Assembly (NCBI RefSeq): GCF_902652985.1
Contig: NC_047029.1
Span: 13,020,001-13,084,000 of the forward strand
Direction: 5' to 3'
Origin: Pecten maximus
Lineage: Eukaryota
DNA: 64,000 nt
Shown: in pieces, positions 4,114 to 53,778 of the stretch
Layout: the number at the start of each line of letters is the position of its first letter
Numbering within the stretch: the first letter of the stretch is position 1
Notes under the pieces: generated by a model
What the model was told of the DNA's origin: nothing
The model's input: the letters and a program-made list of their open reading frames with translations, nothing else
The model's database searches: none
Made by a program: the position numbers and the translations under genes

Positions 4114-4454
4114 TTAAATGAACGAGTGTTAAATGTGTCCTAACTGATGGAGTATTTTTAATTTCTCATCATGCAGGAGATGCTCAGCTCAATCTATTAG
4201 CTGTATGAACTTATCTTCCGATTGCGACACTTCAACTCAACGACAGCCATTCGCAAATAGATAAGAACTGCATTAGAGACACAGAAATTGACACGAACTT
4301 TTATTGCTTCTTAACCGTCAGCTGCAAAAAAGGTAATTGCGATATCTCTACAATCATCAGATTTGAATACTGGAGTTCAGATGGCGTATTCAGAAAACTG
4401 TGGGGAGTGGGAAACAACTTTTAGTCAATTATAAAAATATGGGTATAACGGAGA

Positions 4455-6085: not shown

Positions 6086-7286
6086 ACACCGGTGTGCTTG
6101 ACTTTCATACTCAAAATACAAACAGTTTGACAGTAAATTGTGATATATTTCATATTGATGACACTTCTGCACTTTGATATAAATAAAATTATAGCACATC
6201 CTTGGATCAGGGTGATGATTTTAATTAGAAATAATCGATAATTATGTGTCTGGTTTTCAAGTTTTCTCCAATATGGGGTCAGGTAAGGACTGAACTGAGC
6301 GACCGCAAATGATTGTGGGAAGGTCAGTGGCCACCACGTACATGTAGACATAAGGGCAAATAGAGAGTTGCAAATCTCTCTATATATGTACATGTATGTC
6401 TCTGATTAATTGCAAAGGGGGGTGGGGGGGGGGGGGGGGGGGGGGGGGGGAATTGATAAAAAATCAGTTTTACATAGAACCAATAAAGATCACTCTATGG
6501 TGGGAGTGAATATCCCTCCGGAATGTCATATTATTTTCTGCTTTTCGTACTTAATATCCAGCATATACGATTCAGACAATTTTGATATACGTGTACTATT
6601 TTGAAATGATATAACCCACATTACTTACTCAGCAGAACTTGATTATACTCTTAGAAGAACTATAGGGTGCTATAGGGTGCTTGAAGTATGGGGCATTACA
6701 TTAGCTAAAAATCTATTTATCAAATGTGAACATTATAGTGACGATTATCATTCTTAGTAATAAATAAAAGAATCGGTACAAGCATTTTATCATATACATA
6801 TCAATGGCTACCTGGTGATATCAAAACCAAAATACAAAATGATGTATATAACATTGTATATTTGTCTGTGATTTTCTTTCAGATCTTCCAAAGTATGTAG
6901 TTCAGAATGATGGCCATGTTTTCAATGAAACATACAAACTGAATAATCAGCCATTTTTGTTTTTACCTTGAGTTGTAAATATGTTGTAAATAAATTGTTG
7001 ACTGTGTCTATATGCCTTTTTTCTAAACTTGTGAATAATAGTATGCATTCTGACACCGGACTAGGACAAAATGTGAAATGTAAAATTAGCAAACAAACTG
7101 AATACTCAGCCATTTTTGTTATTACCGGGAGTTGTAAATATATATGTATATATATATGTATATGGTGTAAATATTTTGTTGACTGTGTATATCTATACAT
7201 TTTTGTTCTAAACTTGTGAATAATTGTATGCATTTTGAAACCGGACGAGGAAAAAATGTGATAGCGATAGGTCATTTCCTGCCTGT

Positions 7287-7412
7287 CACTCGTGTGGCTA
7301 ATATTTTGATATTTTTCACTCGTGCTGCGCACTCGTGAAAAATATCAAAGTATTAGCCCCACTCGTGAAATATATTTGGTATTACTGAAGACTCTGTTAG
7401 ATATCCTCTATA
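7287..7412 (-). mobile_element. Truncated Crypton-like hairpin element end
   Basis: Hairpin 7287-7367 contains four cactcgtg motifs. The minus-strand terminus reads TAGAGG, like the element at 18609, and abuts a TA run. Confidence 0.6.
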
Positions 7413-7918
7413 TATTGTCATACGTTTCTTAAACTCCAGTCAAATCACGACAGTTTATAACAGAATGCCACCCAATATGGTACTTCGAAAATGACAGTTG
7501 ACACTCCCAAAAAGAAAAACCTGTTGAGAGTAAAGATATAAATATTTGTCAAATCATCACTCACCTCTATGAAGAATGTTACTGGAATGTATGTAATTCA
7601 GTGCAAGACAGATTTGCACAAACCAGTCGAAAATTACCTGAAAGGAAAGATGAAGTTCGCTGAATAACAGTATAGGGGAAAATCTCAAATTTCAACCTCT
7701 AACATCACATTAACATTGTATCTCTGTTTGATTTTTAAGAATCCTTTCTTTATTACTTTAAATTAAAAGATAATTTCAAGAAAATACATCTGTTGTGTTA
7801 TTTTTCCATTTCATAACCAATATTTTGTCTTCTGCTTTCTCCCTTTTTTTAAATACAGTGTAAAAGTAAGATTTGGAAAATTCATCAAAAGATAATGATT
7901 CTATAAATGCGGAGTAAG

Positions 7919-7933
7919 GTGTGTGCGCGCGCG

Positions 7934-7971
<38 letters not shown>
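7919..7971. repeat. (GT)n microsatellite
   Basis: Direct reading. Confidence 0.95.
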
Positions 7972-7973
<2 letters not shown>

Positions 7974-9101
7974 GGAGGATTACTTTATGTTCGTGTTTGT
8001 CTCCTTGTGATAGCATGAAAGCTATGTCGACTTTATAGTGCTATCTCACTGAAGTAACTACAGAAGACATCCATCGGGACGCCCACACAATTAAATTATA
8101 CTGACATCAGAGAAATCAAAAAATATGTTGTATAGGATATTCATATGCTATTTGAAAATATTTTCCTGAATCTGCTGTAGCATCCAGTGTTTTTTTTTTT
8201 TTTAACTTGTATGATTTATGGGCTCAAGTACTGATTTCAATTTTATTCCGATCTGACCATTGAAAACAAGTTCATGCAGGTTGGACGTAAGAATTGCACA
8301 TGCTTTCCCTAAGCGCAATTTATAACAGGCGACTGAATTTGGGATATCGATTTGTTTTTATTTTCATAACTGTCCTCTTTCATTATATATCATAAGTTTT
8401 TTTTTCTAATAACGGTACTTTCTTCTTCATTCACAAAGAAACGCTACTGAACCATTCCATGTCATCATAATTGACAAGGAGAGAGTCTTAAGCGGCCCTT
8501 TAGGCGGCCCATTCAAGCTGTCACTGCCGTTCGATGACATCATTGTGTTGACACTGTGGCATATCTTTGGTTTTATTACATAACATTAATCAATTATGCA
8601 AATTACATAGAGATGATATGCATTTTGTATTTATTTCAGTGTTAGTTCTGAGTCATCAAGGTCAGGCTTTTATACCGCTTTGAAATTTATGTATTTATAC
8701 CCAAATGATTTATTAGTATTATTTAAACGATAACCGGTTGAGAATCTGTTTTACATACCATGGGATTTAAGCTGAAAGAAGCATTTTTTCCTTTTATGAA
8801 GTCTCGGGTAATCGATTTGTCTTTAACTAGACCAATGTTCACAACCTTTATTTTAATAATGCAACATTTGAGCCTTCGTGAATGTTTTGAGTAGTAGTCA
8901 AACGTGTGTGCATCTGTTGAGTAACAGGAACAATATAACGACGAAATTCATATTGCATTATATTGATCTTTAAAAAGAAATGAAAATCTTTGATAGGTCC
9001 AGAGGCTGCACGTATATAAGTTAGTTTTGTCCTGCGCTTTGCTGGTTGCTTCAAGGATCACACACATCAGTGTTGTAAGGCAGGTTACTCATCAAATCTC
9101 A

Positions 9102-9986
9102 ATGGATCTTCTTATTGTTGCTTTAGTGATCACTATTTCCGAAGTTAGCGGTTCGTTATATAAAGTTAAAACACAAAATACTTACATTCCAACGCCCTCT
9201 AGGATTCCATCTGTGACAGAGAGGATGACATGTGCTCTGATGTGTCACCATAGCAACTGTGATGCTTTTGTGGTGAATGATAGCGATCATATGTGCAGAT
9301 TTATGCCACCAAACAGTATCTCGTATGGAGACCTGTACATTTCTAGTGATATCGGGATGTGTCACTTTCTACCGGCGGGAAGTCCTTGAGATGTCTACAC
9401 TATAACAACCAGCGACTTGGCCACGACTGATGTGTTTTGTGACATGGACACATTGGGCGGTGGATGGACAGTCATACAGACTAGATTTGATGGAAGCCAG
9501 GACTTCAACAAAACTTGGGAGGAATACAAACGAGGATTCGGTTCTCCGTATGGTGAATACTGGATTGGGAATGAGAATTTGTTCCTGCTAACTTCCTCAG
9601 AATCATACACACTTCGTATAGAAATAGAAAATGCCACTGGTTCATCAATATATGCAGAGTATTCGGTTTTTCTAGTTGCATCTGAAAGTGAAAACTACAC
9701 TCTGACATTGTCTGGATTTTCAGGGAATGTCTATAATTCCATGACTGAACATAACCTTAAACCATTCAGCACGGCAGATCACGATAATGACGGAATTTCT
9801 GGTAACTGTGCACAAAACAACCAAGCTGGATGGTGGTTCGACGACTGCCACAGAGTCAACTTGAATGGACCGTACATGCCGTCAACAAGCGAAGACAGCA
9901 AAGCCATGTCCTGGTACGAATTCGACACCAAACGTTTTGAAACTTTGAAATCGTCGAAGATGATGATACGTCCAACTTCATTTTGA
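9102..9986 (+). pseudogene. Secreted PAN/apple plus fibrinogen C-terminal (FReD) protein, ~294 aa, interrupted by an in-frame TGA at 9387-9389
   Basis: Signal peptide MDLLIVALVITISEVSG. PAN-like CALMC...CDAF...C. FReD motifs VFCDMDTLGGGWTVIQTRFDGS, FG...GEYWIG, FSTADHDND, GWWFDDC...NLNG, MMIRP. ORFs 9027-9389 and 9417-9986 are in the same frame. TATA-like tatataag at ~9013. Confidence 0.85.
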
Positions 9987-11076
9987 AAGCATGGATTTAA
10001 AAAACAATGATGCATATTACATAGATAATCATATACTTGTACGTGTTGTAATACTTCTAGTGCAACGTCGTAATGTACGTATTTTTTTTTTATTTTTTTT
10101 TTGTAAATTGTATGAATAATTTAGACATAATACAATACACAGTGTGGTGTGTCTATGAACCTTTTAAATATGGTTCTGTTTTGCACTTTATATTCTCTTT
10201 AACCCCATCGTGTTTGAGTCTCGACAAGGGAACTGACTGCCTCAATAATTCCACAGATATTCCTATCCAAATTGTAGTAATAATCAAACTTTTGAACATG
10301 CATGCAGCTGGAATGTTTTATTGGAACCCCGTGCTTGTAGTTTAGATGATTTTACTTTTGAGATACAGGGAATTTTATGAAATCACGTTTAATATTATTT
10401 ATCAGTCTGTTGGCCTGTTTTCAGTGCATTATACCTACACCATAAATACATATGTGCAAAAATACTGTCATTAATTAATTACTTCACACTATTGCTCGGA
10501 AGTAAACATATTCGCCTGGCTCTTTCTTTTGGCATACAATGTATTGATGGTTACAGACAGGATTATTAGGGAGATGAATCGGAGAGAAATAGAAACTTAT
10601 ACTCGTGCTTATATTGTATGAAATTCATTGAACCCTTATAAAGCTTCCGCTTCCGCATTTCGTTGTCAATTGCGTACTTTTATCTATATACATCTCTTCA
10701 CATACTAATATTAGAATTGAACTAAAACGTATATCAGATAATTTATATAATATATTGTCTATGACGATGCAACGAAATGATCAAAATGGTCACGTGACAT
10801 ACAATAAGTGCCGTTTAGAAGATATACATTGATCATTCTTATTCATCGATTGCAAGAGAAATAGATTTGGAAACATTTTTACTAAGTGAAATACATACAC
10901 ACAAATGCATGTTTTTAAATGATATTATTTACCTTAATGTATATTCAAATGTGTTTCTTAACATGAATTAAACAATAACACGTGATTAAAGTGTAGGATA
11001 CTATTGGAAGAAATCAATAAAACAATGCTATGTATTTTATTCTTGAATGAGTTGTTTGTACTTGCATATACTTGCT

Positions 11077-11155
<79 letters not shown>
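11077..11155. repeat. (TA)n(GA)n compound microsatellite flanking the Crypton element
   Basis: Direct reading. Confidence 0.95.
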
Positions 11156-11159
<4 letters not shown>

Positions 11160-13625
11160 CATGGTCAGTGTCTTAAAATATAAGCTGTATTTTGGCGAGG
11201 GTAAAGAAAGACAAAAGTGGCGAGCCTTGGCGAGCCACTTTTGTCTTTCTGTCCCGAGCCAAAATACAGCTTATATTTTAAGACACTGACCATGTATTCT
11301 ATTTATCCTGCACCACTCATCGACATTTAACATTTAATTTAAAGATGTTCCTAAAATGTTCGCATGAACAATGTTGCTTTCTGACGCTCCCTGGCGCATG
11401 ACAATATGCGATCAGCTGTTGAAGTGAAACTAGGTTAGATGACGTACGCTTTAAAGTATTCCGCGGTAAAAATATAGTTCCCGACATTTTCAGCTGAGCC
11501 AATGATTTCTTCATCTCACTGAAATTAACTTGACAGAAAGAAAAATGAACATAGCAATTTCCAACATGTATTCAAGTCATGGAGGGATATAATTAATTCC
11601 CTGACATATAGACATTCAGATTCTGGACATTCAGTACTGCCCCATAGAACATGGAGTTCATTGACATCTGTGATAGTGTGTTGTTTGTTACCGGATTAAC
11701 GTTAACATTTGAGGAATTAGAACTTTCTGGACAAGGATTTGGACACGTGTTTAAACTGTGGTGGGTAGATAGTATATTGGAGTAGTTTCTTTGTTGATTC
11801 TCAGTGATGGCACTCTAATTAATGATGGATTGGACATTTTTGTGCCCACTTATTTGCATAATGTCGGTTGGCGGTATGTTTTCATTTCTTAATTTTTGAA
11901 TAAGATGTTTACGCGCACTGTGGTTTGTGAGTTTCTTATGTGGATCAAGTTTTCTCTTTATTGCCATTGTTTTCATGAGACTGCCTAGTTTCTTTTCCCC
12001 GATTTACTGTTTTATGAACCATTTAACAGAACGCCCGTCTGTCAGTGGAATTGTCCTGGGGGCTATATAAAACGGATCGTCCTTTCCAGAGAAGCCTTCT
12101 GAGCGGTTTTCTGAATATACTTTGTACATTTGTACCGGGTCATTTTCGCCTCCATTTGAGAACATTTTTGGTGTAGTTTCCCTCGTGTCACATATGTTAA
12201 CACCCGTTCGCGTTTTTGTCTGTCTTTCATTCAACTCTAAATAAGAGTGACATCGCCCCATCTTAAATTGTAGTGCTCGCTGACCCCTCTAAGGCCAAAA
12301 TGTATGGAATTGTTAAGCCACACAGTGTTCAATAGAGCCTCTGGTGATGATTTCCCTAAAATGTTTTTGCGATATAAAATATTTATTTCGTCGTCCGTAA
12401 TAGGATCCGACTTGTTTACTTTGTTACCCTATCCTTGTTTTTTCAGCTGTTTTTGTTTTGCCGACAATGACAGAATTCGTTGGGATTCCCATTCATGATT
12501 TTGTGACCGTATTTTTGTCTCTGTAATTTTCTGTCTACACTGCCTATAATAGATCTGAGAGAGGTAGGTTCATATTCCCAGCCGTCCTTTTCTCGGACTG
12601 CAATAACAAAGTTGGCCAATAATGAATCTAATTCATCATGTGGAATGTTGTGTAAGTCTCTCGACTCGTTTTTCATAGCTAAAAATTTCTTGACAAGAGC
12701 GATATCATGCAATGTTTTTTTCTTGGTATTTTCATTCTTTTGGTTTTCAATGAAACTTTCTATTTCTTTCATATCGATGTTTACAAATTGTTCATTATCT
12801 CGAGTTGTTTTGGGTGGTGACGGCAAATAGGGTTCTGGTATAGCGGTGTTGTTGACGTCATTCATGTCCGAGTGCCCATGTATGTCATCCATATGGGGGT
12901 TAATGCTATCATCATCGACCATATTGATAGCAGTCATTAACTGAGGGTCATATTCATTTGGTATTTCTACTAAGTTCAGCCGCTGAGTCTCTGGAGGTGT
13001 AACATTGACGCTATCTAATTTTACAGTTTGACTGACAGAGGGTGTCGGTTCATTGTTCACATATTCAACAGCAGGTTCATGATTTAGATCTAATGATACT
13101 TCTCTTGGCATGTCAGGCTCTATATCAATTATATCACAGAGCAATTCAAAAGTTTGCTGACTAACATCCATTTTGAAATTGTCGTCATCTTCAATTTGTT
13201 CCTCAGACATATTGGCGTAGGTTGTTTGTTTACTTGTTGTTGTTGTTTGTTTGTTGACAGCGGTGACGTTAAGTTAAGAGCAGACGTCACGACGACGTCA
13301 AAAACGTCACAAAGCAGATCAGCGGAATATATATTGACTAGATATATTACAGATATAATCTAAATCCTGAAACATGATGCTTTCGACATGAACAAACAAT
13401 TTTTACAAATAAAAATAAAGCAAGATGATATTTATGACATGTGTGTAATGCGATTTTTTTTTTTTAACCGAGACCAAAGTTCAAGGTGTGGGTCATTCAA
13501 AAGTAGTTCCGTCTAGTCGAATTCATGCACGTGAAAAAATACAGCTGTTTTCCGTCACTGCCGTATACAGCAAAAATATATACGGTAGGTGTATTCCGAC
13601 AATGCGTTGGCAGTTGCAGGATAAA
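11154..13625 (-). mobile_element. Crypton-type tyrosine-recombinase DNA transposon, full length but inactivated
   Basis: Terminal hairpin at 11154-11300. Internal tttatcctgca (11302-11312) is inverted to the terminal tgcaggataaa (13615-13625). Encloses a degenerate YR gene and is flanked by microsatellite or TA-rich sequence. Confidence 0.88.
11593..13210 (-). pseudogene. Crypton tyrosine recombinase (DUF3504/ZMYM-KCTD1-related YR), with frameshifts and stops
   Basis: Minus-strand translation gives KNENTKKKT, EYEPTSL, SPEALLNTVW...HFGLRG..EH..L.WGDV, ERQTKTRTG, DPV..YK.Y, KLTNHSARK, IMQISGHKNVQSIIN*S and a C-terminal MFYGAVLNVQNLNVY. The catalytic Tyr codon is TAG (11815-11817), with another stop at ~12004. 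Confidence 0.88.
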
Positions 13626-16144: not shown

Positions 16145-19100
16145 ATGGAGTCCGAATACAATTACGCAGTATTCCAAGTGGATAATAGAAATACTCCGAG
16201 TTGTGACGAGTCATTACGACCGACGAGCTGTTCTAGTAGGGGCAGCAAAAGGTAACTTTGTATTCATATGTATTAAAATGGTAAGGACGTACCAGAAATT
16301 AACTTCCGTGGTTCATTTCCGACATATTTGTATATATTCAACGGAAATTCATTAATAATCTTGTATGCTTGTTTTGTTTGAACGTGGAATAATAATCATC
16401 CAGTTGGGAATTGGAAAACTATATTCAATTTAGTTAGATATACATTAATAATATACATAACCTATTATCTTATATGACCTTGTATACATCCTTGTGCGAT
16501 ATCAATTTTGGACTAAATAATAAAGTTGCTGAAATCCCCTTCGTGGCATTACGGACCACAAAGTCATCGGGGGTATATCACATCCCTGCACTTATTTAGG
16601 TGGAACTGCCAATACTTTCTCTTTGCTTCTTTAGGAATCGAATACAATCCCTTACTGATCACGAGAGTATGTATTATAGGGTCACAGAATACAACCCCTT
16701 ACTGGTCACGAGAGTATGTATTATAGGGTCACAGAATACAACCCCTTACTGGTCACGAGAGTATGTATTATAGGGTCACAGAATACAATCCCTTACTGGT
16801 CACGAGAGTATGTATTATAGGGTCACAGAATACAACCCCTTACTGGTCACGAGAGTATGTATTATAGGGTCACAGAATACAATCCCTTACTGGTCACGAG
16901 AGTATGTATTATAGGGTCACAGAATACAATCCCTTACTGGTCACGAGAGTATGTATTATAGGGTCACAGAATACAACCCCTTACTGGTCACGAGAGTATG
17001 TATTATAGGGTCACAGAATACAACCCCTTACTGGTCACGAGAGTATGTATTATAGGGTCACAGAATACAACCCCTTACTGGTCACGAGAGTATGTATTAT
17101 AGGGTCACAGAATACAACCCCTTACTGGTCACGAGAGTATGTATTATAGGGTCACAGAATACAACCCCTTACTGGTCACGAGAGTTTGTATTATAGGGTC
17201 ACAGAATACAACCCCTTACTGGTCACGAGAGTATGTATTATAGGGTCACAGAATACAACCCCTTACTGGTCACGAGAGTATGTATTATAGGGTCACAGAA
17301 TACAACCCCTTACTGGTCACGAGAGTATGTATTATAGGGTCACAGAATACAACCCCTTACTGGTCACGAGAGTATGTATTATAGGGTCACTGAATACAAA
17401 ATTGGTGTATGTAAAGCATACATGCCGATATCATTTTCTTATACCGTACATTTGAATGGTGCAGTTTTAAGATCATGATTGGATATTTACTGAATCGTTT
17501 ACGCGTACCGTAATATGTTTGCTGTTGTTCTAGTGATAGTGGACGTTTGTTCTTGTTCATATGATATTAGATGTTTGTCGTTGTTCAATGATATAAGCCG
17601 TTTGGTACTGTTCCGATGATATTTGTTTTCGTTTTAAGTTGTTTTGATGACGTATTGTATTGTTTTGATGATTTGAGATGTTCGTTGTTGGTGAGATAAT
17701 ATTAGATGTTGGTTATTGTTTTGATAATATGATATGTTTGCTGTTATTCTGAAGATATCAAATTTTTGTTGCTGTTTTGATGATATGAGAAGTTTGTTGT
17801 TAGTGAGATGATATTCGTTTTCGTTTTAAGTTTTTTTTTTATGAGATACTATGTTTGTATTGTTCTGAGGATATCATTAGTTTGTTGTTGTTCTGATTAT
17901 ATGAGATATTTATTTGTGATCCGATGATATTGGACCACAATTTACAGAAATGACAATTAGCGCTATCATAATCTAGTAGAAGACTTACTTATGTTACCGC
18001 TGAAATATATATAGCTGTCCGCTTGTTTGCAACACATTGTCCAGTATGGTTTCTGCCGAGGAATGGTTTTCGTAACTTCATATCTGTTTAAGATATTGAT
18101 TTAATACTCAAATCAAATTAACAGTGAAGTTTTTTTTTTAGTTTGTGTTTTACATACGCACTCGGCAAATATAACAACTAGGGTTACATCTGTCACGGTT
18201 CGATTTTACATTCAACCAAGGTTCTTGATTATACTTTATAGTACCGTGTTTTGAACATAAAAAACCAAACTACGTGTATATACAGGTCCATCATTTGCAA
18301 TATACAGTAATAACAACAAATATTTACAGCAGCACAGAATGAAACCAACTTCCTCAGTAACACAATATTTGTATTACCCCAAACTATAAATTACAAAGTA
18401 TCAAAAAGTATACCAGCCAGTAGCTTCTGTAAAGGTATAAGAGAAGTATACAACCAAATTGCAACTAATGAACTATCAGACAATGGCTGTTATATCTTCA
18501 TCCTTACTCCCACACATACTAGTTACATTCACATATGTAGACTTACACACTTTTCCATTCAAAATGGTGCACATATATTAGCATACACTGTTTTCAATAT
18601 TAAATACATAGAGGTTACACAACGAGTGGTTGTTGGATATGGAATTTATTTCACACGAGTAAGTTATTTTTTAAAAGTTACAAAAGACACGAGCTTTAGC
18701 GAGTGTTTTTCGCAACTTTTAAAAAATAACTTACGAGTGTGAAATAAATTCCATATCCAACAATTTCGAGTCGTGTGACCTGTTTCTACCACAATAATAT
18801 CGGCTTGAATCAAAGGGAAACGTGGCCAAGTATAATTTCGAGTATGCAAATAAAGTGTACCGGTGACGTCCGGGACCCGGTGATGTGACGTCATTTGATT
18901 ATTGATGACGTCAATAACAATTGCAGCTTGTGTGCCGTGTTAGCCAATCAAAATGCGTACAGAGTTTATACCACGTGTGGTATGTGGTATAAACAGATTG
19001 TTAATCAACAGCTGTAATGATGAACTGATGGTCTGAGAGTTGAATAACACAGGGTATTGTGGTAGAAACAATCATAATCACTCGCACACATTACCAAAAT

Positions 19101-22100: not shown

Positions 22101-25100
22101 TTTTTATCATAACAAGTCTATGGGGGAAAGACATAAATGTTTCATCAAATCAATGCCAGATAATTGTTGAATCCAATGTTCTTTTCGTTTCCCGGATAGA
22201 TACTTCTGTACTACAAATGTTAACGCCATCGATTTCATGTGTCATATATAAACTAAACGCCATTACTAAAAATGCTATTTTGCTATAATACTAAAAATGT
22301 TATTATACTATGATACTTAAAATGTTATTATGCTATAATACTTAAAATGCTATTATGCTATAATACTAAAAATGCTATTTTGCTATAATACTAAAAATGC
22401 TATTGTGCTATAATACTAAAAATGCTATTGTGTTATAAAACTAAAAATGCTATTTTGCTATAATACTAAAAATACTATTATGCTATAATACTAAAAATGC
22501 TATTGTGTTATAATACTAAAAATGCTATTGTGCTTTAACACTAAAAATGCTTTTGTGTTATAATACTAAAATGCTATTTTGCATTAATACTAAAAATACT
22601 ATTATGCTATAATACTAAAAATGCTATTATGCTATATAAACACGTATGTTTTGTAGGTTTCAGTTGAACATCCTCCCAATGTTGAGACCGGTACATGGAC
22701 TGTTCTACGCTATGAGCATGCACTGCAGATATAATTGTCTGGACAGAGAGATCGAGTAAGTACAGTTAACATTATGTACGGCCAATATATTTAAGGATTG
22801 AATCTTGATTTGGTCGATTTCATGGGGTCATGAATTTAATTGCTCTTGAGACAAATTTAATGAACTGCGAAGCAGTTCATGTTGAATTTGTCTCAAGAGC
22901 AACTCAATTCATGACCCCATGAAATCGACCAAATCAAGATTCAATCCTTATATTTCAATTCTTTTTTTTTTCGAATAAAAAAGTCGGTCTAGATATTAAT
23001 GTCTCGAAGCTTGTGCAAGTCCAAATGCGGAAAACTCCGAGGAGTTCCGGATTGTGCATGTCTAGTCAATCGAGTAAAAGAGTCAGCAATATTAGGATTA
23101 AAAATAGCATTATTTTGTCAAAATAGAAGAATTTAGCATATCTGGTCTTTCATAAAATACAAGAATACATAATAAATTTGATAATTTTAATAATTATTCC
23201 ATGTTTATAACAACAATGTAGAAAAAGTGAAATCGTCCCGCGGAAGAATTTTAACCATGTATTCATACGCACTGATCAGTGTTAATCTGGTCAAATTCAT
23301 GAGCAAATGAAACAGATTAAGTTTGGTAGTTTCATTGAGTCCAACTTGAGTAGAAATTGAAATATTACATAATAACTATATATATATAATAAATGATATA
23401 TCTCAAACCCTTTAGAATAACGTTAAGATATCAACATTTATAAATAACTAAATTGTATTGTTTTATGTTTTAACAGCTTTCTGCCTGGCGCAAGAAATGT
23501 ATACTCCAGCTTCTTGTCTGGAGTTCTTGGATTGATGAGGAGCGCAAAAGTCCTTTTAAAGAGGCTTAAGTGAGTATACATACACATGATATTACTATTC
23601 CTACTCCTTGTACGTTTTGGTAAGTCCTTCTGTAATTTTTACATTTAATATATTGCCCTAATCTTTATTGATTACGGTTCTGTGTACGCCGTTCTTCTGT
23701 AATTCTTATCCATGTTCCTTTTAACCTAATAAGTATAGATCTCACAGATGTATATATACGTATCATATATCTTATGGAGGTAAACATATCAAATAGAAAC
23801 GCAGAGATTTGTTTCCTATATAATAATTCAAGGTTCATTTCAGATATGAAAATGACCAGGCTGGTCAAAGAAGAAGCATGATACAAAACAGCATATCCGG
23901 ATTTTTGACAGAAATATCAATCATCATCACACAAGGAACAAATCAGTATGTTTTCGGTATTTTAACAAAATTATATTTAACGTCAAAATCAGTTATTTAT
24001 TCACGAAGCAAGTATAATTATATAATACAATTCAAATCAATTTCTGATTAATTGATGTATGTAAGAATGTTGAAAACAACAATTGTTGTCCTTACATCAT
24101 TTCAAGCAAGTTATTGTATTTTACATCAGCAATATAATTACGTATAACAATTACGTGATGTATAGATATATACACTAAAACACAATATGATTTCCTATAT
24201 ACCGATATAGATGTAAACTATAACACCATGTTTTTAGTCTTTATATCAATATAATGTCAATTATCGGACGTACATATATGTGAATATCATTTAACCAACA
24301 CACACAATGTCATACAATTTTATTAACATTATAGAATATTATTTTTAACTATAAATTGACATTTCAGCGTTTCATTAGAAGAGTATAGACAGCTGATGTT
24401 TAAAGTTGGAAGTCTTTGTACAGATACTTTCTTTGGAATAGGGAAAACGAAAGGGTAAGTTTGTCGACTTCAGTTCTTATTACATGAATCAGGTACGAAG
24501 AACTTAATTCAGATAAAGATACGGAGTACAGTTAAAGATGAATTGAAATCTGTTATTATATACTAGTATATATTCGAATGAGTGGGCTGTATATGGATAC
24601 AATATAGATGATACTGATACCTATATGAACATGTTACATTCACTTTCAATCGAAATACAAAGAAGATGAGGATATTGTTTTTGATTTGGGGCATCATACC
24701 TCCATTATTATTCTGTAAACGTGCTTAATTTGACACACATTCATTTATTAGCGCAAAACCAACTAAAACAGATAAGCGGAATGATAAATAAGGGCACCAA
24801 CAATGGTTGCCATAGAAACTAATGTAGATAAACTACAATTAGCTCAATCATAATTTAGCGAAATGCTTCTAGCGCTAAAAACACTAAATTAGATAGATAA
24901 GAAAAATTAGATTACCCTCAAAATATGTACATATACAGTATTTAAAATAACATGGTATTTCTTCCTTGGGTAATCTTTGGTGATGGAAGATTAAATGTGG
25001 ATATACACCTTTTTCAGAATCGCAGATACATTGGAAATGGGAGAGGGTGTGGTGGCCTTGGAACCATGTAAGCACTTAGGTAATGTATCCTACTGTGACG

Positions 25101-34100: not shown

Positions 34101-35022
34101 GTTGATATCAATTATTCATGCATATAGATATCATACACTCACCTGTTATTATGTTCTGGTAAGGCATAAGTTAATTTTGTTAGGAATTGGTACCAATTAG
34201 GATGGATTTGACGTAGCGACATTTGTTATAGTTCGTCTAAGAAAAACACCAATCTCACACTGCCCCCCGAAATGTGTCGATATGTTGATTACATTATACA
34301 GTATTCTATCTGCTCTGGTAATGCTGGTATTAGTTCATACAGACATTCATATCGACAGGCAGACCAGAAGTTTGACCTAATTTTTACCATCATTGCTAAT
34401 GAGTTAATATTTATTCTTTCATTAGCCAAGTAAATAATCAGATAAATAGAAATACGAAACAGTGACCATCGATTATTACGTCACTGCCATGCACATGCAA
34501 ATATATGAGTTATTGTAAAGGGTATATGTAGCCAATATTGATAATAATTTATAAATGAAAATTCTACATGACGAAATGGCTGCTCACTTTAAACATCGAT
34601 TGATATTTGCGTATTTCTTTTGTTTAATGTTTAAACTAAACACGGTATTCGCTGTTACAATGAACATTTAACTTTCCTTCACACTAAATGAAGTGATTTT
34701 TGTCGCCTCAGATGACGTTCCAATACTAAGTCACCAGAGCTTACTTGCTCTTTCGAGCGCAATCAACATCCAAGTTGCCCAAGTGCTGGGCTCCCAGCTC
34801 GGGTTGCCGTACGAGGACATCATGGATATCAAGAGCATCAACCAGCCCCCTGTTGTCACTATCTTCGAGATTCTGTGGGAATGGAGAGGAAAGGTCGCTA
34901 CGCCGGACCAAGTGGAACAGCTTGTTCAATCATTCAATCAAATAAACCAAAAGTACTTTGCTGATGTCATTCTGAAGGCCAATAGAGAAAAACGAGGATT
35001 AACGCGGAAGGATTTCCAGTGA
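16145..35022 (+). CDS. Death-domain protein, DTHD1/PIDD-like (helical N-terminus-ZU5-ZU5-UPA-linker-death domain), ~871 aa. Exons: 16145-16251, 19329-19424, 19782-19877, 20653-20763, 21630-21719, 22657-22755, 23477-23569, 23844-23945, 24368-24454, 25018-25330, 26014-26193, 26444-26566, 26935-27107, 28767-29308, 33730-33822, 34712-35022
   Basis: All introns are GT-AG with compatible phases, giving one open frame of 2616 nt. ZU5-like motifs MISDIFQI...ITLRFP...W.DV and DNRVRINFPKDCF..PV...AISD...LP...TFQVDRF. The last exon is a death fold (LGSQLGL...I..IK...FEILWEWR...LV..F). The first exon is the least certain. Confidence 0.8.
16641..17399. repeat. 47-bp minisatellite, ~16 near-identical copies (intron 1)
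   Basis: Unit ccccttactggtcacgagagtatgtattatagggtcacagaatacaa. Confidence 0.97.
17515..17932. repeat. Degenerate ~25-bp GT-rich tandem repeat
   Basis: Recurrent tttgttgttgttctgatgatattagatg variants. Confidence 0.7.
18609..19069 (+). mobile_element. Non-autonomous Crypton-like hairpin element
   Basis: Hairpin at ~18611-18782. Internal tttctaccacaata (18783-18796) is inverted to the terminal tattgtggtagaaa (19055-19068). Confidence 0.8.
22264..22636. repeat. 25-bp minisatellite, ~15 copies, immediately upstream of an exon acceptor
   Basis: Unit actaaaaatgctatt(a/t/g)tgctataat. Confidence 0.93.
22792..23364 (+). mobile_element. Non-autonomous Crypton-like hairpin element
   Basis: Near-perfect hairpin at 22792-22950 with a GCGAAGC apex. 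Internal tatttcaatt is inverted to the terminal aattgaaata (~23355-23364). Confidence 0.8.
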
Positions 35023-38000: not shown

Positions 38001-38944
38001 ATCGGTACTTAGACTGGTATACTGATTCTGCACTGGTGAGCTTAAGGACAGGAACGGAAGTATCTGAAGAATCGTTGTAGAATAAGGTAAAACTTCTTTA
38101 ATGCTAAAAATTATCGCATTTGTAATAAATGTATTATACAAAGTGACTTATATTTTAAGAGACCGAGGAAATAAATGTTATTGCATTTGAATATTCAATA
38201 TACAGGAGGTATAATTACAAGTACCGGCTTAGGGTTAACATATACACTGTTAAATTCAACAGTGTGCATTTTAAAACTATATTTCAAGTGTTCTTTTAAA
38301 TTCGAGACATTTTATTTGATTCATCACACGTAATGCAATATATAAAACGAATTTCAACTCTAGATATTTCAATTCTTGATTTCTTGAGTAGAATGGTTAT
38401 AACTACAAATGTACAATTGGATTAGTTTTTAGGCATATGTCCAGGTTGATAATGTTCCAGGATATTCAACTAAACAGGCAAACGTGTTCTTGTCATAGTT
38501 AGGATTTCTACATGTAACAATTTAATAAATATTCAGGTACGTTTTAGTAGACTTTATTTTGGATTGAGAATATTCGAGAAACGCAATGTAGCGCGAAAGG
38601 AAATATTCAAAATAAGCAATGCAACATGAAAGGCAATATCCATGTATAATCTAAGTACATACGTAATTCCATAGTTTATACAGCGTATAACATGACAAAT
38701 CTAAAGATGTGTTTAATTCTTTTCTTTTCATAATATAGTTAAGGTATTTTGTTTTCTAGAAATTTTCTATTTTCATAAGCGGTGTCCAGACACATATTTG
38801 AATCATAAGATACATTTATATCAAAATGCTGATGCATTGTATCTTTTTCGAACATGAATATAATATTATGATTTTATTAATATTATATAAGCAATACATT
38901 TGGAGTACTGGTATTCATGAATATGTTTATTTCAGAACACAATT

Positions 38945-39208
38945 ATGAAGCTGGCGATCATTGTCGTGACAGTTGGTGTCTGCCTATTTGAATTGTCATT
39001 GTGTGCTGAAATCATGGGGGCTCCATCAATGGAAGGCATAGACCGGGACTGCTGGAGTCTATGCTGGCAAGACTACACTCACTGCCACAAGTACTTCCAA
39101 TGTGCCGATCGTCTGGGAGACGAAAGCAACGGCGAATGTACAATGTATTGTGCTGGTCGTAACAAGAGGTGTATGGACAGGTGTCTTGCTGTTTCGAACC
39201 AAAAGTAA
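38945..39208 (+). CDS. Secreted cysteine-rich peptide precursor, 87 aa (signal peptide, short acidic propiece, 8-Cys domain)
   Basis: Hydrophobic leader MKLAIIVVTVGVCLFELSLC. Cys spacing C-X3-C-X6-C-X5-C-X11-C-X3-C-X6-C-X3-C. Acceptor tttcag at 38935 before the ATG and AATAAA at ~39438. Confidence 0.85.
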   Translation: MKLAIIVVTVGVCLFELSLCAEIMGAPSMEGIDRDCWSLCWQDYTHCHKYFQCADRLGDESNGECTMYCAGRNKRCMDRCLAVSNQK

Positions 39209-42200
39209 TACCAATGGCTGTTCTTCTTCAAGGCGAATTCATACGTCGTGTATGTAACTTTATTTCGGAAAACTATTAATTACAAACTTGTATCTTCATT
39301 CAGTATGCTTGAATATATTGGCGGAAATTGTATTCATTTTTCATAACAACATTATCCTCATCACAGTGTGTAGTAATGTCTGGGACGGCGTTACCACGGT
39401 TAATACTCTCCGCCGTCGAATTTCTTGTATTCTTTTAAATAAACGCGATCATTGAAATATTTACTTTAATTCCATGTTGTCGTGGTCTTCTAAACATAAA
39501 AATAACTCAAAATATCTCAAAGAATAAATGTTGTAGATGGAACTATATTTTGCTTGTGTTGTTGTTTTGACGGTTGCTAAGACCGTGCCGAGAACTGCCA
39601 TACACTTTCCTGCGAAAACGGCTGTTCTCTCTCTGACGTCCATCACGGGTAAAAACAGAACCAAATGCATTTGTTTATTTTTGGGTGCTTTAACAGATAA
39701 GATAAAATAATCATAATCTAAATATAAGAAATGTTGTTATGACATCATAAATGTTTCAAAAATAGATTTCATTCCTTAATAGTTAACCTCCTTCATTTAT
39801 ATTGTGATGTTTAGGTTTTTTTGTTTTTTTTATTAATTGAATATTGAAGAATTGACCTGTAAAGAGGAGTATGTTTTATAGATGAAAACGGTACTTGCTC
39901 CATGTTTGTAGAAATAAATAGTTAAAGATTTCTCATATTGATTATTTACGATTTACGACTACCAGATGAACCTCTCCGGGCTCGCTTTTAAGTGATAGCT
40001 CTATTGCAGACATGCCGTTGCAGTTACATGTTTATATGAAATAAAAAGCGTAGACAGTTACTCTTCATATTTGAGAGGGTGGCAAGGTGTTTCTCTTAAT
40101 GTAACATTATAAAGATGTCATAGTCATCATACTAAATCTCATAATTGTACGAGGGGCAAAAGCCGCCAGTATTACAAGCGCTGAATGTATAGAGGTGACA
40201 GCATATCATCTAAAACGAATAACTAATTTATCTTTTGGATTGTTCTAAATGATGAGTTCCCCCGTATTTACGTTCAATTTTAGTACCCGTAAAAATATGT
40301 AATGATATATGTTTTTCATGGACCCATAATGATTAACTAAAATAGCTTAAACATCTTAATTAGGTAGACTAAACGTTACCAATATCCAGACGCACATAGG
40401 CCAATTACAATGTACGTCAATGTAGACGTTTTGATGAATAACAGACGGTATTAAGGGCCGTCATAAGCACACTTAGATAAGTTGCGAGATTGCAGTACGA
40501 TTTCTGCTTATCACATGTTGTTTTTTTTTCCTCTTGTCTTCATGCACCAGTAGAGTACGTATTCGAAACGTGTGGGACAAGGGATAAAATTCATTATTGA
40601 ACTATACCACAACGATTATTATATTACTGTAAGACATTATTTTGTAAAAAAAAAAAAAAAAAAAAAGAGTGACATTTATGCCAAGTTTAAATATGAGTAG
40701 CATTTTTTCTCGGAGCAGCTAACCAAAGGCAGTGTTGAAGCCATGTATGTTTCCATCATTATTTTGCATTTGCGAGTTAACGAAATATTGCCAGACCAAA
40801 CTCTGACGAATGATCAACTTTAGACCTTTTGCGTTCCACCTATTATGGGGAATAGGTACATAATTGTGTATCGAATACATTACGCATGGCAGTATTCCTG
40901 TACACTCAACGGTCCGTTAAATGAGATATAAAATGCATGTTGTTTTCCTAATATTGTAGTTTACATATTAATTAATAATAAAGTTTTTGGAGATTCGTGT
41001 CACAATCGCGTGTATTTTTATATTTGTCATGTGTGTCTGTATATATTGTGACTTGCTGTTACTATCTGTATTGCGTAACGGATGTTCCGTAGAGGGTGAG
41101 TGAGCGCGCACGAGCGGGAGCCATGACAGTGCTCTAACAGGCTGTGTCGACGGATTAGATGTGTTTAACATTATACGGGCACAGAAACCTTACAGTCTGT
41201 GGTAAGTATTGCTTTAGCAGTTAGTAGTTATATATATTTTGTGATAATCTTCGCTTATTTTGTGTAAAAGGGGGTTATTTAACCTTGGAATGTTGTTCAT
41301 GCATTATGTCAACGTGCGGTCCAATCATGCATATCTTTCCATGATTTGTAATTGTTTTAATTGATTTATGTACATTTGCTCAATCGTACTTCCAAATGTA
41401 AACATATATATTAGAGTGAAGCTAGAGTATTTCCAGCGTCATTGTTTAATCTTATTTTTGCTTCGTTTTGTTAGTTTACTCTATCACGTCAAGTTAAACA
41501 CAACAACAAAACAGACAACATATTGGTATTTGTATATAATACATTCCGGCATTCGTTACAATATGTAATATCATTCTAAACGTTGTGTGTATTGATTGGC
41601 GAAATGTGTGTTGAAAAACCTTGATAACAATTGTAAAAGACTTTTCTTATATCATTAATTATTCACATATATATGTCGATGAATCGTGATCTAGATAAGT
41701 AAACGGCATGGACTAAAACATGGGTGGTTACTTTTTAAATAAAAAACGAAAACAGTGTCTTACAGAAGCTTAAACACTTTCTTTGTCGTAATGCTCCATT
41801 GAGAACATATAAAACATTATTATGAATGGGATTGGTGTGCATGATTTGAATATGAAAAGGCGCAAAGAGAAGCAGTCTTTATTATTACGGCCCTTCCATC
41901 ATTTGGCCGTATTGAGCATTTACGTTATGAAATAGACTTTAACCCTTGATAATAATAAAGTGAACTGTTTCTAGCCATAGAAAACTACAACTGCTATATA
42001 AGATGTACAACAACTTAACTCATGACTTCCTGGATTATCTACTGGTACCTATTATTGGCGAAAACAATCACTTTGCTGTGCGAAACAATAATAACTGCAA
42101 AGTTCCTCTATCAAGACTCCCTCGTACCAGCTCTTCTTTTATACCTTCAAGTCTTCATAGTTGGAATGCATTAAAATGATGCAGTTTGTTTACTACTTTC

Positions 42201-42645
42201 ATTAGATTTCTACAGTCTCCCCGGCTATATTTTGGGGATATGAGAATCGCAAGATGATTATTTTTCATAAAAGCTTTAGATAGGTGTGTATTTCCCTTAA
42301 TTATTATCTTTGAAGAGCTAACTTTGTAAATAATGCAGAATATACTTCTGTAATGCTGTGAGAATGTCTTCACTACTTTTTTGAAAGTCGTTTTTTTATT
42401 AATGAAAGAAAATATTCTTAAACTTGGGCCATTTTTTTTGGGGGGGGGGGGGGGGGGGGAGGGGGAACTCACATCTAACATTGGACCTGAATTAAAAAAA
42501 AAATCTTAAGATATGTGCAAACCTTTATTAACCCCAGCAACATCTTTTGTTATTTATCAATATTGTACTATTGTTGAAGTATGAGAAGGCGTAGAGAAGT
42601 TTTTGTATCAAAGGCCGGTCTGGCCTGCGTGGGACCTGAGGATAT

Positions 42646-42850
42646 GGACCGCGGTAGCCGAGTTGTTAAGGTGTCCCGACACTTTATCATTAGCCCACCA
42701 CGTCTGGGTCGCGAGTTCGAAACCCACGTGGGGCAACTGCCTTGTACTGACCGTAGGCCGGTGGTTTTTCTCCGGGTACTCCGGCTTCCTCCACCTCCAA
42801 AACCTGGCACGTCCTTAAATAACCCTTGCTTTCAATATGAAGTTAAACAA
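42646..42850 (+). mobile_element. tRNA-derived SINE (V/Meta-type central domain)
   Basis: A-box-like tagccgagttg, B-box gagttcgaaacc, conserved ggtttttctccgggtactccggcttcctccacc and an AAAC-type tail. A second copy lies at 55907. Confidence 0.85.
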
Positions 42851-42854
42851 TATT

Positions 42855-43261
42855 TAAGCATTGAACTGCTTTCATTTGGAAGTTATGGACTGATGAATGC
42901 CAACTGGACAAAGGCAAATTTAAGGAAGCGCGCTAGCGCTTCATGTTGAATTTGCCTTTGTCCAGTTGGCATTCATCAGCCCATAGCTTCCAAATGAAAG
43001 CAGTTCAATGCTTATATTTACATTTGACAACGATTTTTAAAGACTATATCCAGGAATTTTGCTCCGACGATGAAGAAACAAATTATTATCGTCAAAGACG
43101 GAACAGCTTTTTCAACAGCCATCTTTCGTTATCACCGATGTGACAATTATGACGTCACTATAATAATGACGTCATAATAAAGATTGGAAGTTATGGACTC
43201 ATAACTTCCAAGTGAGCTTGGTAGAGTTATATAGTGGGGCTGCAGTGTAAATGTAAATATA
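42855..43261 (+). mobile_element. Non-autonomous Crypton-like hairpin element inserted in the SINE tail
   Basis: Hairpin at 42855-43014. Internal tatttacattt is inverted to the terminal aaatgtaaata (43249-43259). The SINE tail aaaccaaac resumes after it. Confidence 0.8.
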
Positions 43262-53744: not shown

Positions 53745-53778
53745 ATGGACCCCATTTGGTCCCGCCTTTCAGGTCCCT

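What the first reader, a model, noticed from the sequence alone, without database searches (positions are those of the whole stretch)
7287..43014. Hairpins carry strand-specific, DNA-type structural signatures (sheared G.A pairs, GNA loops, shared bulge)
Seen: arm mismatches are not random. CGAG faces CGAG (tandem G.A) twice in 11154-11300, two to three times in 18611-18782 and twice on the minus strand of 7287-7367. The opposite strand would carry destabilising T.C pairs instead. Apices are C(GAA)G (GCGAAGC, 22867-22873), C(GCTA)G (42931-42936), C(GCA)G (minus strand of 7325-7329), C(CTTG)G and C(TTTA)G. Elements 22792 and 42855 share the same asymmetric segment (aaatttaa.gaa opposite ttcatgttgaattt). 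In every case the favoured strand is the one with the hairpin at its 5' end. Known: tandem sheared G.A in CGAG and GNA triloops are unusually stable in DNA, and integron integrases read extrahelical bases on one folded strand of attC. Inference: selection acts on one folded ssDNA strand, recognised by structure rather than sequence.
Basis: partly seen in the sequence, partly recalled or inferred. Interest (0 to 1): 0.85.

Follow-up and report, generated by a model that had tools for sequence, protein, structure and literature searches.

The report
Hairpin ends of scallop Crypton transposons
The five long hairpins are the conserved end structures of tyrosine-recombinase (Crypton-type) jumping genes and their short derivatives in the king scallop genome, and their mismatches consistently favour folding of one DNA strand, hinting at a single-strand or cruciform step not yet described for such elements in animals.

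Summary

I collected about 20 related hairpins from scallop, two mussels and metagenome contigs. They carry about 40 CGAG/CGAG blocks, of which 9 were forced by the search pattern. A few blocks are Watson-Crick variants. None is TC/TC on the strand fixed by other landmarks.

Stems differ in sequence but stay paired: 35 of 60 pairs are compensatory across four genomes.

In seven loci (six distinct elements) the hairpin lies 20-500 nt downstream of a tyrosine-recombinase (YR) gene, and the GA strand is always antisense to that gene. Four of these genes are DUF3504/Crypton-A type, including the decayed copy at 13210-11596.

The element layout is:
- a TAGAG leader
- the long hairpin
- a trailer
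- the YR gene, or its deletion
- a TGACGTCA cluster
- a short second hairpin

One copy sits in a tandem array with no target duplication.

The hairpins are therefore cis-acting ends of Crypton-type elements and their non-autonomous derivatives. That one folded strand is what the recombinase reads is plausible but unproven. Published Crypton descriptions that I could search mention no hairpins.

The parts
7286..7368 (-). H1 inner hairpin: four direct CACGAGTG boxes (two CGAG/CGAG blocks) and a GCGCAGC apex
   Evidence: 98% identical to metagenome copy L008
7369..7410 (-). H1 leader (TAGAGG at 7410-7405) and left outer arm. The matching right outer arm is deleted, with the breakpoint at the 3' edge of the outer-right box (about 7286).
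   Evidence: alignment with the full copy L008
11154..11300 (+). H2 long hairpin: boxes GGCGAGGG / GGCGAGCC x2 / CCCGAGCC forming two CGAG/CGAG blocks. Trailer TTTATCCTGCA follows at 11311-11321.
   Evidence: sequence-homologous to the hairpins downstream of YR genes in Mytilus edulis L146 and M. coruscus L144
11596..13210 (-). Decayed Crypton-A-type tyrosine recombinase gene (QRICH1-like N domain, DUF3504, Phage_integrase C-terminus). It has at least two frameshifts and several stops.
   Evidence: tblastn of P0001 covers 12790-11602 and of P0045 12811-11596
13264..13309 (.). Cluster of four TGACGT/ACGTCA (CRE-like) motifs just upstream of the YR start codon; probable YR promoter region
   Evidence: the same motif cluster lies 70-150 nt after H0, H3, H5 and L017
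13531..13558 (.). Short palindrome beyond the YR gene that shares AAAATACAGCT with the H2 arm; candidate far-end hairpin of the H2 element
   Evidence: analogous short hairpins in the H0, H3, H5 and L145 elements
18609..18788 (+). H3: TAGAGG leader (18609-18614) and a long hairpin with six direct nCGAGt boxes forming three CGAG/CGAG blocks
   Evidence: shares the sequence AAATACATAGAGG left of the stem with H0
18864..18994 (+). H3 element interior: TGACGTCA cluster (18864-18913) and short perfect hairpin (18964-18994)
22789..22953 (+). H4: long hairpin of the second family. It has no CGAG block, a GCGAAGC apex, and a conserved asymmetric loop TAA/TGTTG.
42852..43017 (+). H5: same family as H4, with a GCGCTAGC apex (GCGNNAGC type). 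The middle of the arms differs from H4 but remains complementary.
43150..43211 (+). H5 element interior: two TGACGTCA motifs (43150-43174) and a short perfect hairpin (43184-43211) that repeats 16 nt of the H5 left arm

Best explanation
The hairpins are the cis-acting terminal structures of Crypton-type tyrosine-recombinase (YR) DNA transposons and of their abundant internally deleted, non-autonomous derivatives.

A complete element, read on the GA strand, has these parts in order:
- a short TAGAG leader
- a long imperfect palindrome with two or three CGAG/CGAG blocks
- a conserved trailer (TTTATCCTGCA or TTTATTACAT)
- the YR gene on the opposite strand
- a TGACGTCA-rich promoter region
- a shorter second palindrome related to the arms of the first
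- the far end

Inferred mechanism:
1. The YR excises the element as a circle. This brings the two palindromes together in inverted orientation around the junction.
2. When the strands separate or the supercoiled circle extrudes cruciforms, the strand whose 5' end faces the terminus folds into a hairpin. That hairpin is stabilised by sheared G.A pairs and, in one subfamily, nucleated by a GCGNAGC mini-hairpin. The complementary strand carries T.C loops instead.
3. This asymmetry marks which strand the recombinase binds and cuts first.
4. Integration occurs without target duplication.

Shown: the anatomy, the YR linkage, the polarity, the covariation, and insertion without a target-site duplication. 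Inferred: the folding in vivo, recognition of the blocks by the YR, and the order of strand exchange.
For: YR linkage:
- Seven loci (six distinct elements, since L028 and L029 are two copies of one) carry a CGAG-block hairpin 20-500 nt downstream of a YR gene, with the GA strand antisense to the gene.
- These are window H2 with the YR, L013, L028 and L029, L145, L144 from Mytilus coruscus and L146 from M. edulis.
- The H2, L146 and L144 hairpins and trailers are homologous in sequence.

Conserved pairing:
- On the four DUF3504-linked hairpins, 60 pairs are 96.3% paired against 73.6% in shuffles (0/500).
- 35 of those pairs have compensatory changes, slid controls give about 40% pairing, and the CGAG/CGAG loops are unpaired in all four.
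- H4 versus H5: 29 double changes keep pairing against 3 single changes.

Polarity:
- There are about 40 CGAG/CGAG blocks, 9 of them forced by the search pattern. None is TC/TC on the strand defined by leader, trailer or YR orientation.
- G.T wobbles number 16 on the GA strand and 6 on the other.
- Among 12 hits to a pattern with a free 3-nt loop, 11 loops are GNA.
- In L145:11986-12125 the GA blocks and the GCGCTAGC apex lie on the same strand.

Mobility and ends:
- H1 and L008 are 98% identical from CAATATATAGAGG onward and unrelated before it.
- H0 interrupts a 73-nt tandem array with junction overlap of at most 1 nt, so there is no target-site duplication.
- L028 and L029 are identical up to a breakpoint in the centre of a CAC-NN-GTG box.

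Chemistry from the literature:
- The CGAG block is C:G, sheared G:A, A:G, G:C (PMC10085684).
- Only GNA among the 64 possible loops gives GCNNNGC mini-hairpins, with Tm 70-76 C, and the DNA form is more stable than the RNA form (PMC13037366).
Against: - No direct evidence exists that any strand folds in vivo or that the YR touches the blocks.
- Palindrome covariation is equally visible on both strands, so it does not by itself show which strand matters.
- Some copies have Watson-Crick versions of a box (L014 x2, L017, the apex of L145:11986-12125), so a G.A block is not indispensable at every position.
- GNA apices are absent from all DUF3504-linked hairpins (their loops are TCT, CTTG, TTT, TTTTA).
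- H4 and H5 lack CGAG blocks, and no YR was found next to that family.
- The two YR families linked to CGAG hairpins show no detectable similarity by BLASTP.
- A P. maximus QRICH1-like gene (L004) has no hairpin within 10 kb. A distant Crypton (L005) has a 318-nt palindrome upstream of its YR with no CGAG block.
- Nearest-neighbour energies differ by only 0.1-5 kcal/mol between strands.
- The YR in the window is a pseudogene.
Confidence: 0.5

Rival explanations
1. Duplex iteron model. The CGAG-containing boxes are binding sites read in ordinary double-stranded DNA by the recombinase or its N-terminal DNA-binding domain. The fixed GA orientation sets the direction of protein assembly, and no strand ever needs to fold.
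For: - Boxes are conserved as sequence within families: CACGAGTG in H0, H1, H3, L006-L017; GGCGAGSS in H2, L145.
- Perfect-palindrome variants CACTAGTG and CACATGTG occur at the far end of the L028 element.
- The L028/L029 identity breakpoint falls in the centre of such a box, as expected for a crossover site.
- The H1 deletion ends exactly at a box edge.
Against: - It does not explain why the 17-26 nt between boxes are complementary across arms while free to vary in sequence.
- It does not explain why left and right boxes always face each other.
- Box spacing varies from 24 to 34 bp, with no helical phasing.
- Only C-GA-G is constant across families; a 4-nt core in the pyrimidine-GA-purine context is the context reported for sheared tandem G.A pairs.
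- It does not explain why GNA/GNNA loops co-orient with the blocks.
- Flipping one box to CTCG (L014, L017) would reverse a duplex site, yet it keeps the stem paired.
Confidence: 0.2
2. Origin or priming model. The hairpin is a single-strand replication signal, a site where complementary-strand synthesis starts on a displaced or circular single strand as at ssDNA phage origins. It is not the recombination site.
For: - GCGNAGC mini-hairpins occur at G4-type phage origins and at ssiA (PMC13037366).
- The hairpin lies at the 5' end of the favoured strand, which is where a displaced strand would fold first.
- Copy number is high: 7 hairpins in about 94 kb of scallop sequence read.
Against: - No Rep/HUH, primase or polymerase gene is linked; the only linked gene is a YR.
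- The DUF3504-linked hairpins lack GNA apices.
- Breakpoints at the boxes point to recombination at the boxes.
Confidence: 0.1
3. RNA-level model. The palindromes act after transcription, as hairpin RNA giving small RNAs that silence the element, or as a structured non-coding RNA.
For: - Long near-perfect hairpins are typical sources of endogenous small RNAs.
- To my knowledge, tandem G.A in CGAG context also forms in RNA.
- The hairpin lies close to the 3' end of the YR gene.
Against: - The GA strand is antisense to the YR gene in all seven loci, so the YR transcript would carry the U.C version.
- No Rfam family matches.
- GCGNAGC triloop mini-hairpins are a DNA speciality and are markedly more stable than the RNA form.
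- The conserved leader, trailer and insertion boundaries are transposon-end features.
Confidence: 0.07
4. The hairpins are ends or whole bodies of other transposon classes: Helentron/HINE 3' palindromes, foldback elements, or MITEs of DDE transposons. On this view the YR is a neighbour by chance.
For: - Tandem repeats lie just upstream of H2, H3 and H4, as in tandem-repeat-carrying HINEs of oysters.
- Bivalve genomes are rich in Helitron-like elements.
- L028 has a DDE_1 gene next to the YR.
Against: - YR linkage recurs in seven loci from at least four genomes with fixed distance and polarity.
- HINE flanks described for oysters are about 60 bp with short palindromes.
- There are no 5'-TC/CTRR-3' ends.
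- The H0 insertion has no target-site duplication and is asymmetric, so it is not a TIR element.
- The DDE_1 gene in L028 belongs to a separate pogo-like transposon with its own perfect 46-bp TIRs.
- No Rep/helicase ORF is present in the window.
Confidence: 0.05

Closest known systems
Crypton DNA transposons, Crypton-A / DUF3504 lineage (Kojima and Jurka 2011, PMC3212892; Glomhopper paper, PMC13465315)
   Same: - The linked gene has the QRICH1-like N domain, DUF3504 and a Phage_integrase C-terminus.
- It is the only gene of the element, and no reverse transcriptase is present.
- Insertion leaves no target-site duplication.
- Crypton-A is reported among the most active transposon groups in oysters.
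   Different: Published descriptions say Cryptons have no terminal inverted repeats and only 4-6 bp direct repeats, and that some families lack any repeat description. Here one end is a 150-190 nt imperfect palindrome with CGAG blocks, the other end is a shorter related palindrome, and there is a large population of non-autonomous hairpin-bearing derivatives.
Integron attC sites recombined by IntI (bacteria)
   Same: - An imperfect palindrome with little sequence conservation between members.
- Conserved asymmetries that make one folded strand the preferred form.
- A tyrosine recombinase as partner.
   Different: - This is a eukaryotic transposon end, not a gene-cassette site.
- The marks are sheared G.A blocks and, in H4/H5, an asymmetric loop, rather than extrahelical bases.
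- There is no R/L box consensus.
- The YRs are not IntI relatives: the only PDB hit of P0188 is IntI4 at a non-significant E of 0.24.
CTX-phi attP(+) forked hairpin integrated by XerCD (Vibrio)
   Same: A roughly 150-nt hairpin of a single strand, with mismatches at the centre, serves as substrate for a tyrosine recombinase. Only one strand is competent. (Stated from my own knowledge of the system.)
   Different: That system is a filamentous phage genome that is single-stranded by nature. No source of single strands is known for the scallop elements.
Subterminal hairpins of HUH-transposase elements (IS200/IS605, Helitron, Helentron/HINE)
   Same: Strand-specific hairpins at element ends, no target duplication, and abundant non-autonomous derivatives.
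   Different: - No HUH/Rep gene is linked.
- The hairpins here are ten times longer.
- The ends lack the TC/CTRR signature.
- The linked enzyme is a YR.
DNA mini-hairpins GCGNAGC/GCGNNAGC and the CGAG block (PMC13037366, PMC10085684)
   Same: - Apices of H4 and H0 (GCGAAGC), H1 (GCGCAGC), L014 (GCGTAGC), and H5 and L145:11986-12125 (GCGCTAGC) fit the consensus exactly.
- The arm mismatches are the published CGAG block.
   Different: Those are structural motifs defined on oligonucleotides. Their use as marks inside transposon ends has not, to my knowledge, been described.

Membership tests
Crypton (YR-only DNA transposon), Crypton-A lineage | Encodes a tyrosine recombinase with a DUF3504-type catalytic region and no reverse transcriptase | tested here: met
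   - Window 13210-11596: QRICH1 3e-5, DUF3504 1.7e-9, Phage_integrase 1.2e-5.
- 51-59% identity to the intact 533-aa P0001.
- No other transposon ORF in the window.
- The window copy is a pseudogene.
Crypton (YR-only DNA transposon), Crypton-A lineage | No target-site duplication; short direct repeats at the termini as crossover substrates | tested here: inconclusive
   The H0 insertion in a 73-nt tandem array shows junction overlap of at most 1 nt, so there is no duplication. A shared ATACA-like core at both junctions is imperfect (ATACA versus ATAAA), and only one insertion could be analysed.
Crypton (YR-only DNA transposon), Crypton-A lineage | Absence of terminal inverted repeats or other terminal structure (as published) | tested here: not met
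   Long terminal palindrome in all four DUF3504-linked loci. Inverted terminal hairpins in L145. This is a descriptive trait of the family, not a mechanistic one, so I still file the elements as Crypton-type.
Integron attC / IntI system | R''-L''/L'-R' boxes with a GTTRRRY core, extrahelical bases, an IntI-type integrase, and gene cassettes | tested here: not met
   Cassettes and an IntI-type integrase are absent: the host is a eukaryote, the YRs are DUF3504-type or a short unrelated family, and the PDB hit to IntI4 is non-significant. I ran no explicit search for the R/L boxes or GTTRRRY; none was seen on reading the hairpins. The resemblance is functional only.
Helitron / Helentron (HINE) | Rep/helicase partner, 5'-TC and CTRR-3' ends or subterminal inverted repeats with a short 3' palindrome, insertion at AT or TT | tested here: not met
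   No Rep/Hel ORF. The H0 element runs from TAGAGG to ...GATAAAA and was inserted between A and A. HINE flanks are about 60 bp with short palindromes.
MITE or foldback element of a DDE transposon | Terminal inverted repeats at both ends and a target-site duplication of fixed length | tested here: not met
   H0 has no duplication and is asymmetric, with the hairpin at one end only. H1 and L008 share a one-sided boundary. H4 and H5 are flanked by ATATTT on both sides in both copies, which I could not resolve.
Parvovirus-type terminal hairpins | Flip and flop orientations of the terminal palindrome, and a Rep/NS1 HUH nickase | tested here: not met
   Only one orientation of the GA blocks is seen relative to leader, trailer and YR in all copies. 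No Rep gene is present.
DNA mini-hairpin GCGNAGC / GCGNNAGC | The sequence GC-GNA-GC or GC-GNNA-GC on the folding strand | tested here: met
   - H4 at 22867-22873 is GCGAAGC.
- H1 minus strand is GCGCAGC.
- H5 is GCGCTAGC.
- H0 is GCGAAGC.
- 11 of 12 free loops in the metagenome scan are GNA.
- H2 and H3 do not fit.
- Actual folding was not testable here.
CGAG block (tandem sheared G.A) | 5'-pyrimidine-GA-purine-3' facing itself in antiparallel strands | tested here: met
   All blocks are C-GA-G, or T-GA-R in CpG-decayed copies. The sheared geometry itself is not testable with these tools.

The most novel reading that the evidence does not exclude
Bivalve Crypton-type elements recombine through a folded single strand, or one arm of an extruded cruciform. 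Sheared G.A blocks and GNA mini-hairpins act as structural marks read by a eukaryotic tyrosine recombinase. This would be a eukaryotic counterpart of integron attC and CTX-phi integration, and a mechanism of transposition not described for any eukaryotic YR element.
Probability: 0.3. Interest if true: 0.9.

Novelty: new variant of a known kind. Interest (0 to 1): 0.72.

Why it matters
How Cryptons find and cut their ends has been unclear since their discovery. The literature I could search describes them as lacking terminal structure, and some families have no end description at all.

These data give Crypton-A-type elements of bivalves defined ends, a defined polarity and a population of non-autonomous partners. 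Crypton-A is reported among the most active transposon groups in oysters, and the derivatives occur at about one hairpin per 13 kb in the scallop sequence read here.

The data also give a concrete, testable idea: a eukaryotic tyrosine recombinase may use a folded DNA strand marked by sheared G.A pairs. If true, this extends the single-strand recombination logic of integrons and CTX-phi to animals. It would also offer structure-gated recombination sites as tools.

Even if the duplex model wins, the boxes identify the likely recombinase binding and crossover sites.

Tried and rejected
- **Protein searches from the window ORF.** The search for homologous proteins with the 255-aa YR ORF found nothing in its length range. 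The exhaustive representative search then gave 1448 hits.
- **Uninformative contigs.** P0001 and P0153 contigs were transcript-like, without flanks or hairpins. The firefly relative P0190 (L031) and the short contig L030 were also uninformative.
- **Viral contigs.** An exact apex pattern found nothing. A looser two-box pattern found 112 loci, all plain tandem repeats without hairpin context. I used these as a negative control, so a viral origin is not supported.
- **Known RNAs.** Rfam and tRNA scans of the window were empty.
- **Covariation by ungapped alignment.** Anchoring at the apex failed because of 1-2 nt bulges. An alignment of the four YR-linked hairpins replaced it.
- **Trailers.** Beyond about 20 nt they align poorly across families.
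- **DDE_1 as partner.** Rejected, because the gene has its own perfect TIRs.
- **Helentron/HINE reading.** Considered because of the upstream tandem repeats and rejected.
- **L005 palindrome.** It has no CGAG block and lies upstream of a distant YR, so it was not counted.
- **Nearest-neighbour folding.** It cannot test the stability claim.

Full report
**Source and setting.** An exact match of the Mab-21 ORF at 1890-3953 places the window on Pecten maximus chromosome LR736852.1, at about 13.02 Mb. The window is AT-rich animal DNA (34% G+C, no N). Its host genes include Mab-21, fibrinogen-C and MFS transporters.

**The observation.**
- Aligning each left arm with the reverse complement of its right arm shows that every tandem mismatch in H1 (minus strand), H2 and H3 is G.A/A.G inside a C..G frame, seven in all.
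- The apices are as described. H4 and H5 share a conserved asymmetric loop.
- The folds have z-scores of -10 to -24 against shuffles.
- The nearest-neighbour DNA model sees at most 2 kcal/mol between the strands of H1 and H2, and 0.1-5 kcal/mol across 17 trimmed hairpins. The GA strand is lower in 16 of 17.
- This model has no term for the special stability of these motifs, so it cannot settle the point.

**More copies.**
- The 8 kb upstream of the window (L001) holds two further hairpins.
  - H0 has the same apex as H1 (GCGAAGC instead of GCGCAGC), four direct CACGAGT boxes, and the sequence AAATACATAGAGG left of its stem, as in H3.
  - H6 belongs with H4/H5.
- One metagenome scan used the H0/H1 apex with a free 3-nt loop. 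It returned 12 contigs, most of them long hairpins with unrelated stems around the same apex.
- The free loop was GAA eight times, GCA twice, GTA once and TCT once.
- In GCNNNGC only GNA loops form the very stable DNA mini-hairpin (PMC13037366).
- A looser two-box pattern in viral contigs gave only plain tandem repeats. The hairpin context is therefore not a by-product of the pattern.

**Tally.**
- In MFE folds of 17 hairpins, 25 of 29 2x2 loops are CGAG/CGAG and none is TC/TC.
- Adding the mussel and L145 hairpins brings the count to about 40 blocks, 9 of them imposed by the search.
- Three outer boxes (L014 x2, L017) and one apex (L145:11986-12125) are Watson-Crick versions.
- The constant core is only C-GA-G, the pyrimidine-GA-purine context of the published CGAG block with sheared G:A pairs (PMC10085684). 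The flanks of each box change together with the facing arm.

**Link to a recombinase.**
- The only transposon gene in the window is a decayed Crypton-A-type YR at 13210-11596 on the minus strand. It has a QRICH1-like domain, DUF3504 and a Phage_integrase tail, with frameshifts and stops. It ends about 300 nt from H2.
- An exhaustive search gave 1448 relatives. I fetched flanks for those on long contigs.
- In Mytilus edulis (L146), M. coruscus (L144) and an unnamed eukaryotic assembly (L145), a hairpin with two CGAG/CGAG blocks lies 330-490 nt downstream of the YR. The blocks are on the strand antisense to the gene.
- The scallop and mussel hairpins are homologous in sequence and share the trailer TTTATCCTGCA.
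- On these four hairpins, 60 pairs are 96.3% paired against 73.6% in shuffles (0/500). Thirty-five pairs show compensatory change, slid controls give about 40%, and both CGAG/CGAG loops stay unpaired in all four.
- Metagenome contig L013 and its 61%-identical relative (L028, L029) carry a different, short YR family. They show the same layout with CACGAGTG boxes and stems that differ but remain complementary.
- In total that is seven loci (six distinct elements) and two YR families, with one polarity.

**Anatomy of an element.**
- H1 and L008 are 98% identical from CAATATATAGAGG onward and unrelated before it. This fixes the 5' boundary, and TAGAG-like leaders recur in all families.
- H1 has lost its right outer arm, with the breakpoint at the edge of a box.
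- A TGACGTCA cluster and then a short perfect hairpin follow H0, H3 and H5. The short hairpin repeats 16 nt of the main arm in H5 and is similar to the main arm in H0; in H3 I saw no such similarity.
- In the H2 element the same motif cluster sits just upstream of the YR start, and a short palindrome sharing 11 nt with the H2 arm follows it. H0, H3 and H5 therefore look like internal deletion derivatives of YR-carrying elements.
- In L145 the second hairpin is well developed and carries its CGAG blocks on the other strand. At each end the GA strand is thus the one whose 5' end faces the terminus.
- H0 (L001:467-1092) interrupts a 73-nt tandem array with junction overlap of at most 1 nt, so there is no target duplication.
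- L028 and L029 are identical up to a point in the centre of a CAC-NN-GTG box. The DDE_1 gene beside the L028 YR belongs to a separate pogo-like element with perfect 46-bp TIRs.

**Interpretation.** The hairpins are ends of Crypton-type elements and their non-autonomous derivatives. I put this at about 0.85.

That a folded form matters is supported by several points:
- conserved pairing with free sequence
- boxes that always face each other
- variable box spacing (24-34 bp)
- a 4-nt constant core that is a known structural block
- co-orientation with GNA/GNNA apices
- tolerance of Watson-Crick but never TC/TC variants
- a G.T excess on the GA strand (16 against 6)

I put the folded-form claim at about 0.6. 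That the YR reads one folded strand as IntI reads attC is inference, at about 0.3-0.4. The duplex-iteron model remains the main rival, and the breakpoints at boxes fit either view.

**Limits.**
- The H4/H5/H6 family has no CGAG block and no YR neighbour in the data.
- GNA apices are confined to one subfamily.
- A distant Crypton (L005) and a probably domesticated QRICH1-like gene (L004) lack such hairpins.

**Novelty.** Crypton descriptions that I could search state that the elements lack terminal inverted repeats or give no end structure (PMC3212892; PMC13465315). Neither paper mentions hairpins. Repbase and Dfam could not be consulted, so the consensus sequences may already exist there under a Crypton or unknown label. 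What appears new is the terminal palindrome, its strand-biased G.A blocks and the resulting mechanistic hypothesis.

Noticed in passing
window 16640-17399: A 47-bp tandem array (16 units, 98% alike). Each unit contains TCACGAGAGT in the same orientation as the boxes of H3, which lies 1.2 kb downstream. A cluster of three CGAG within 30 nt sits at 16197-16224. It may be a satellite derived from a hairpin element.
   Followed up: partly
window 11096-11156, 22264-22636; L001:297-442 and 1093-1220: Hairpin elements sit at or in tandem repeats. (AG)30 abuts H2, a 25-mer array lies 150 nt upstream of H4, and H0 is inserted inside a 73-nt array that itself carries TGACGTCA. This could be a target preference or repeat generation next to palindromes.
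   Followed up: partly
L001:3727-3856 and 3857-4560: H6 has a perfect 47-bp stem and a 36-nt loop holding two direct TTTCATGTCGCCC copies. It shares the left-flank sequence ATAAGCATTGAACTG with H5. A long array of a unit of about 23 nt (ATGTTATATCATCATGTCACC) follows it.
   Followed up: no
window 6424-6450, 42440-42459, 45530-45550, 53779-53816: Four poly-G runs of 20-38 bases, all on the plus strand. They may be real homopolymers or a sequencing or assembly artefact.
   Followed up: no
window 42691-42787 and 55908-56004: Two 97-nt copies (87% alike) of a tRNA-related, SINE-like repeat. One lies 65 nt upstream of H5. ARAGORN calls no tRNA.
   Followed up: no
window 52400-63950: Segments repeated at spacings of 4.0-5.9 kb (77-91% alike) that include MFS-transporter exons (ORFs 60085-60516 and 60967-61464; also 43644-44624 on the minus strand). 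This looks like a tandem array of MFS paralogues.
   Followed up: no
L028:325-2252: A pogo-like transposon (DDE_1 ORF, perfect 46-bp terminal inverted repeats) inserted beside the YR element. Next to it, at 2250-2301, are two 26-nt tandem units carrying the perfect-palindrome boxes CACTAGTG and CACATGTG.
   Followed up: partly
L005:7883-8200: A 318-nt palindrome (92% complementary, no CGAG blocks) lies 340 nt upstream of a distant Crypton YR (P0143). Two smaller inverted repeats are nearby. This may be a different end architecture in another Crypton lineage.
   Followed up: partly
window 1890-3953, 9417-9986, 34693-35022: Host genes of innate-immunity flavour: a single-exon Mab-21 (cGAS-like) ORF, a fibrinogen-C domain exon and a Death-domain ORF.
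   Followed up: no
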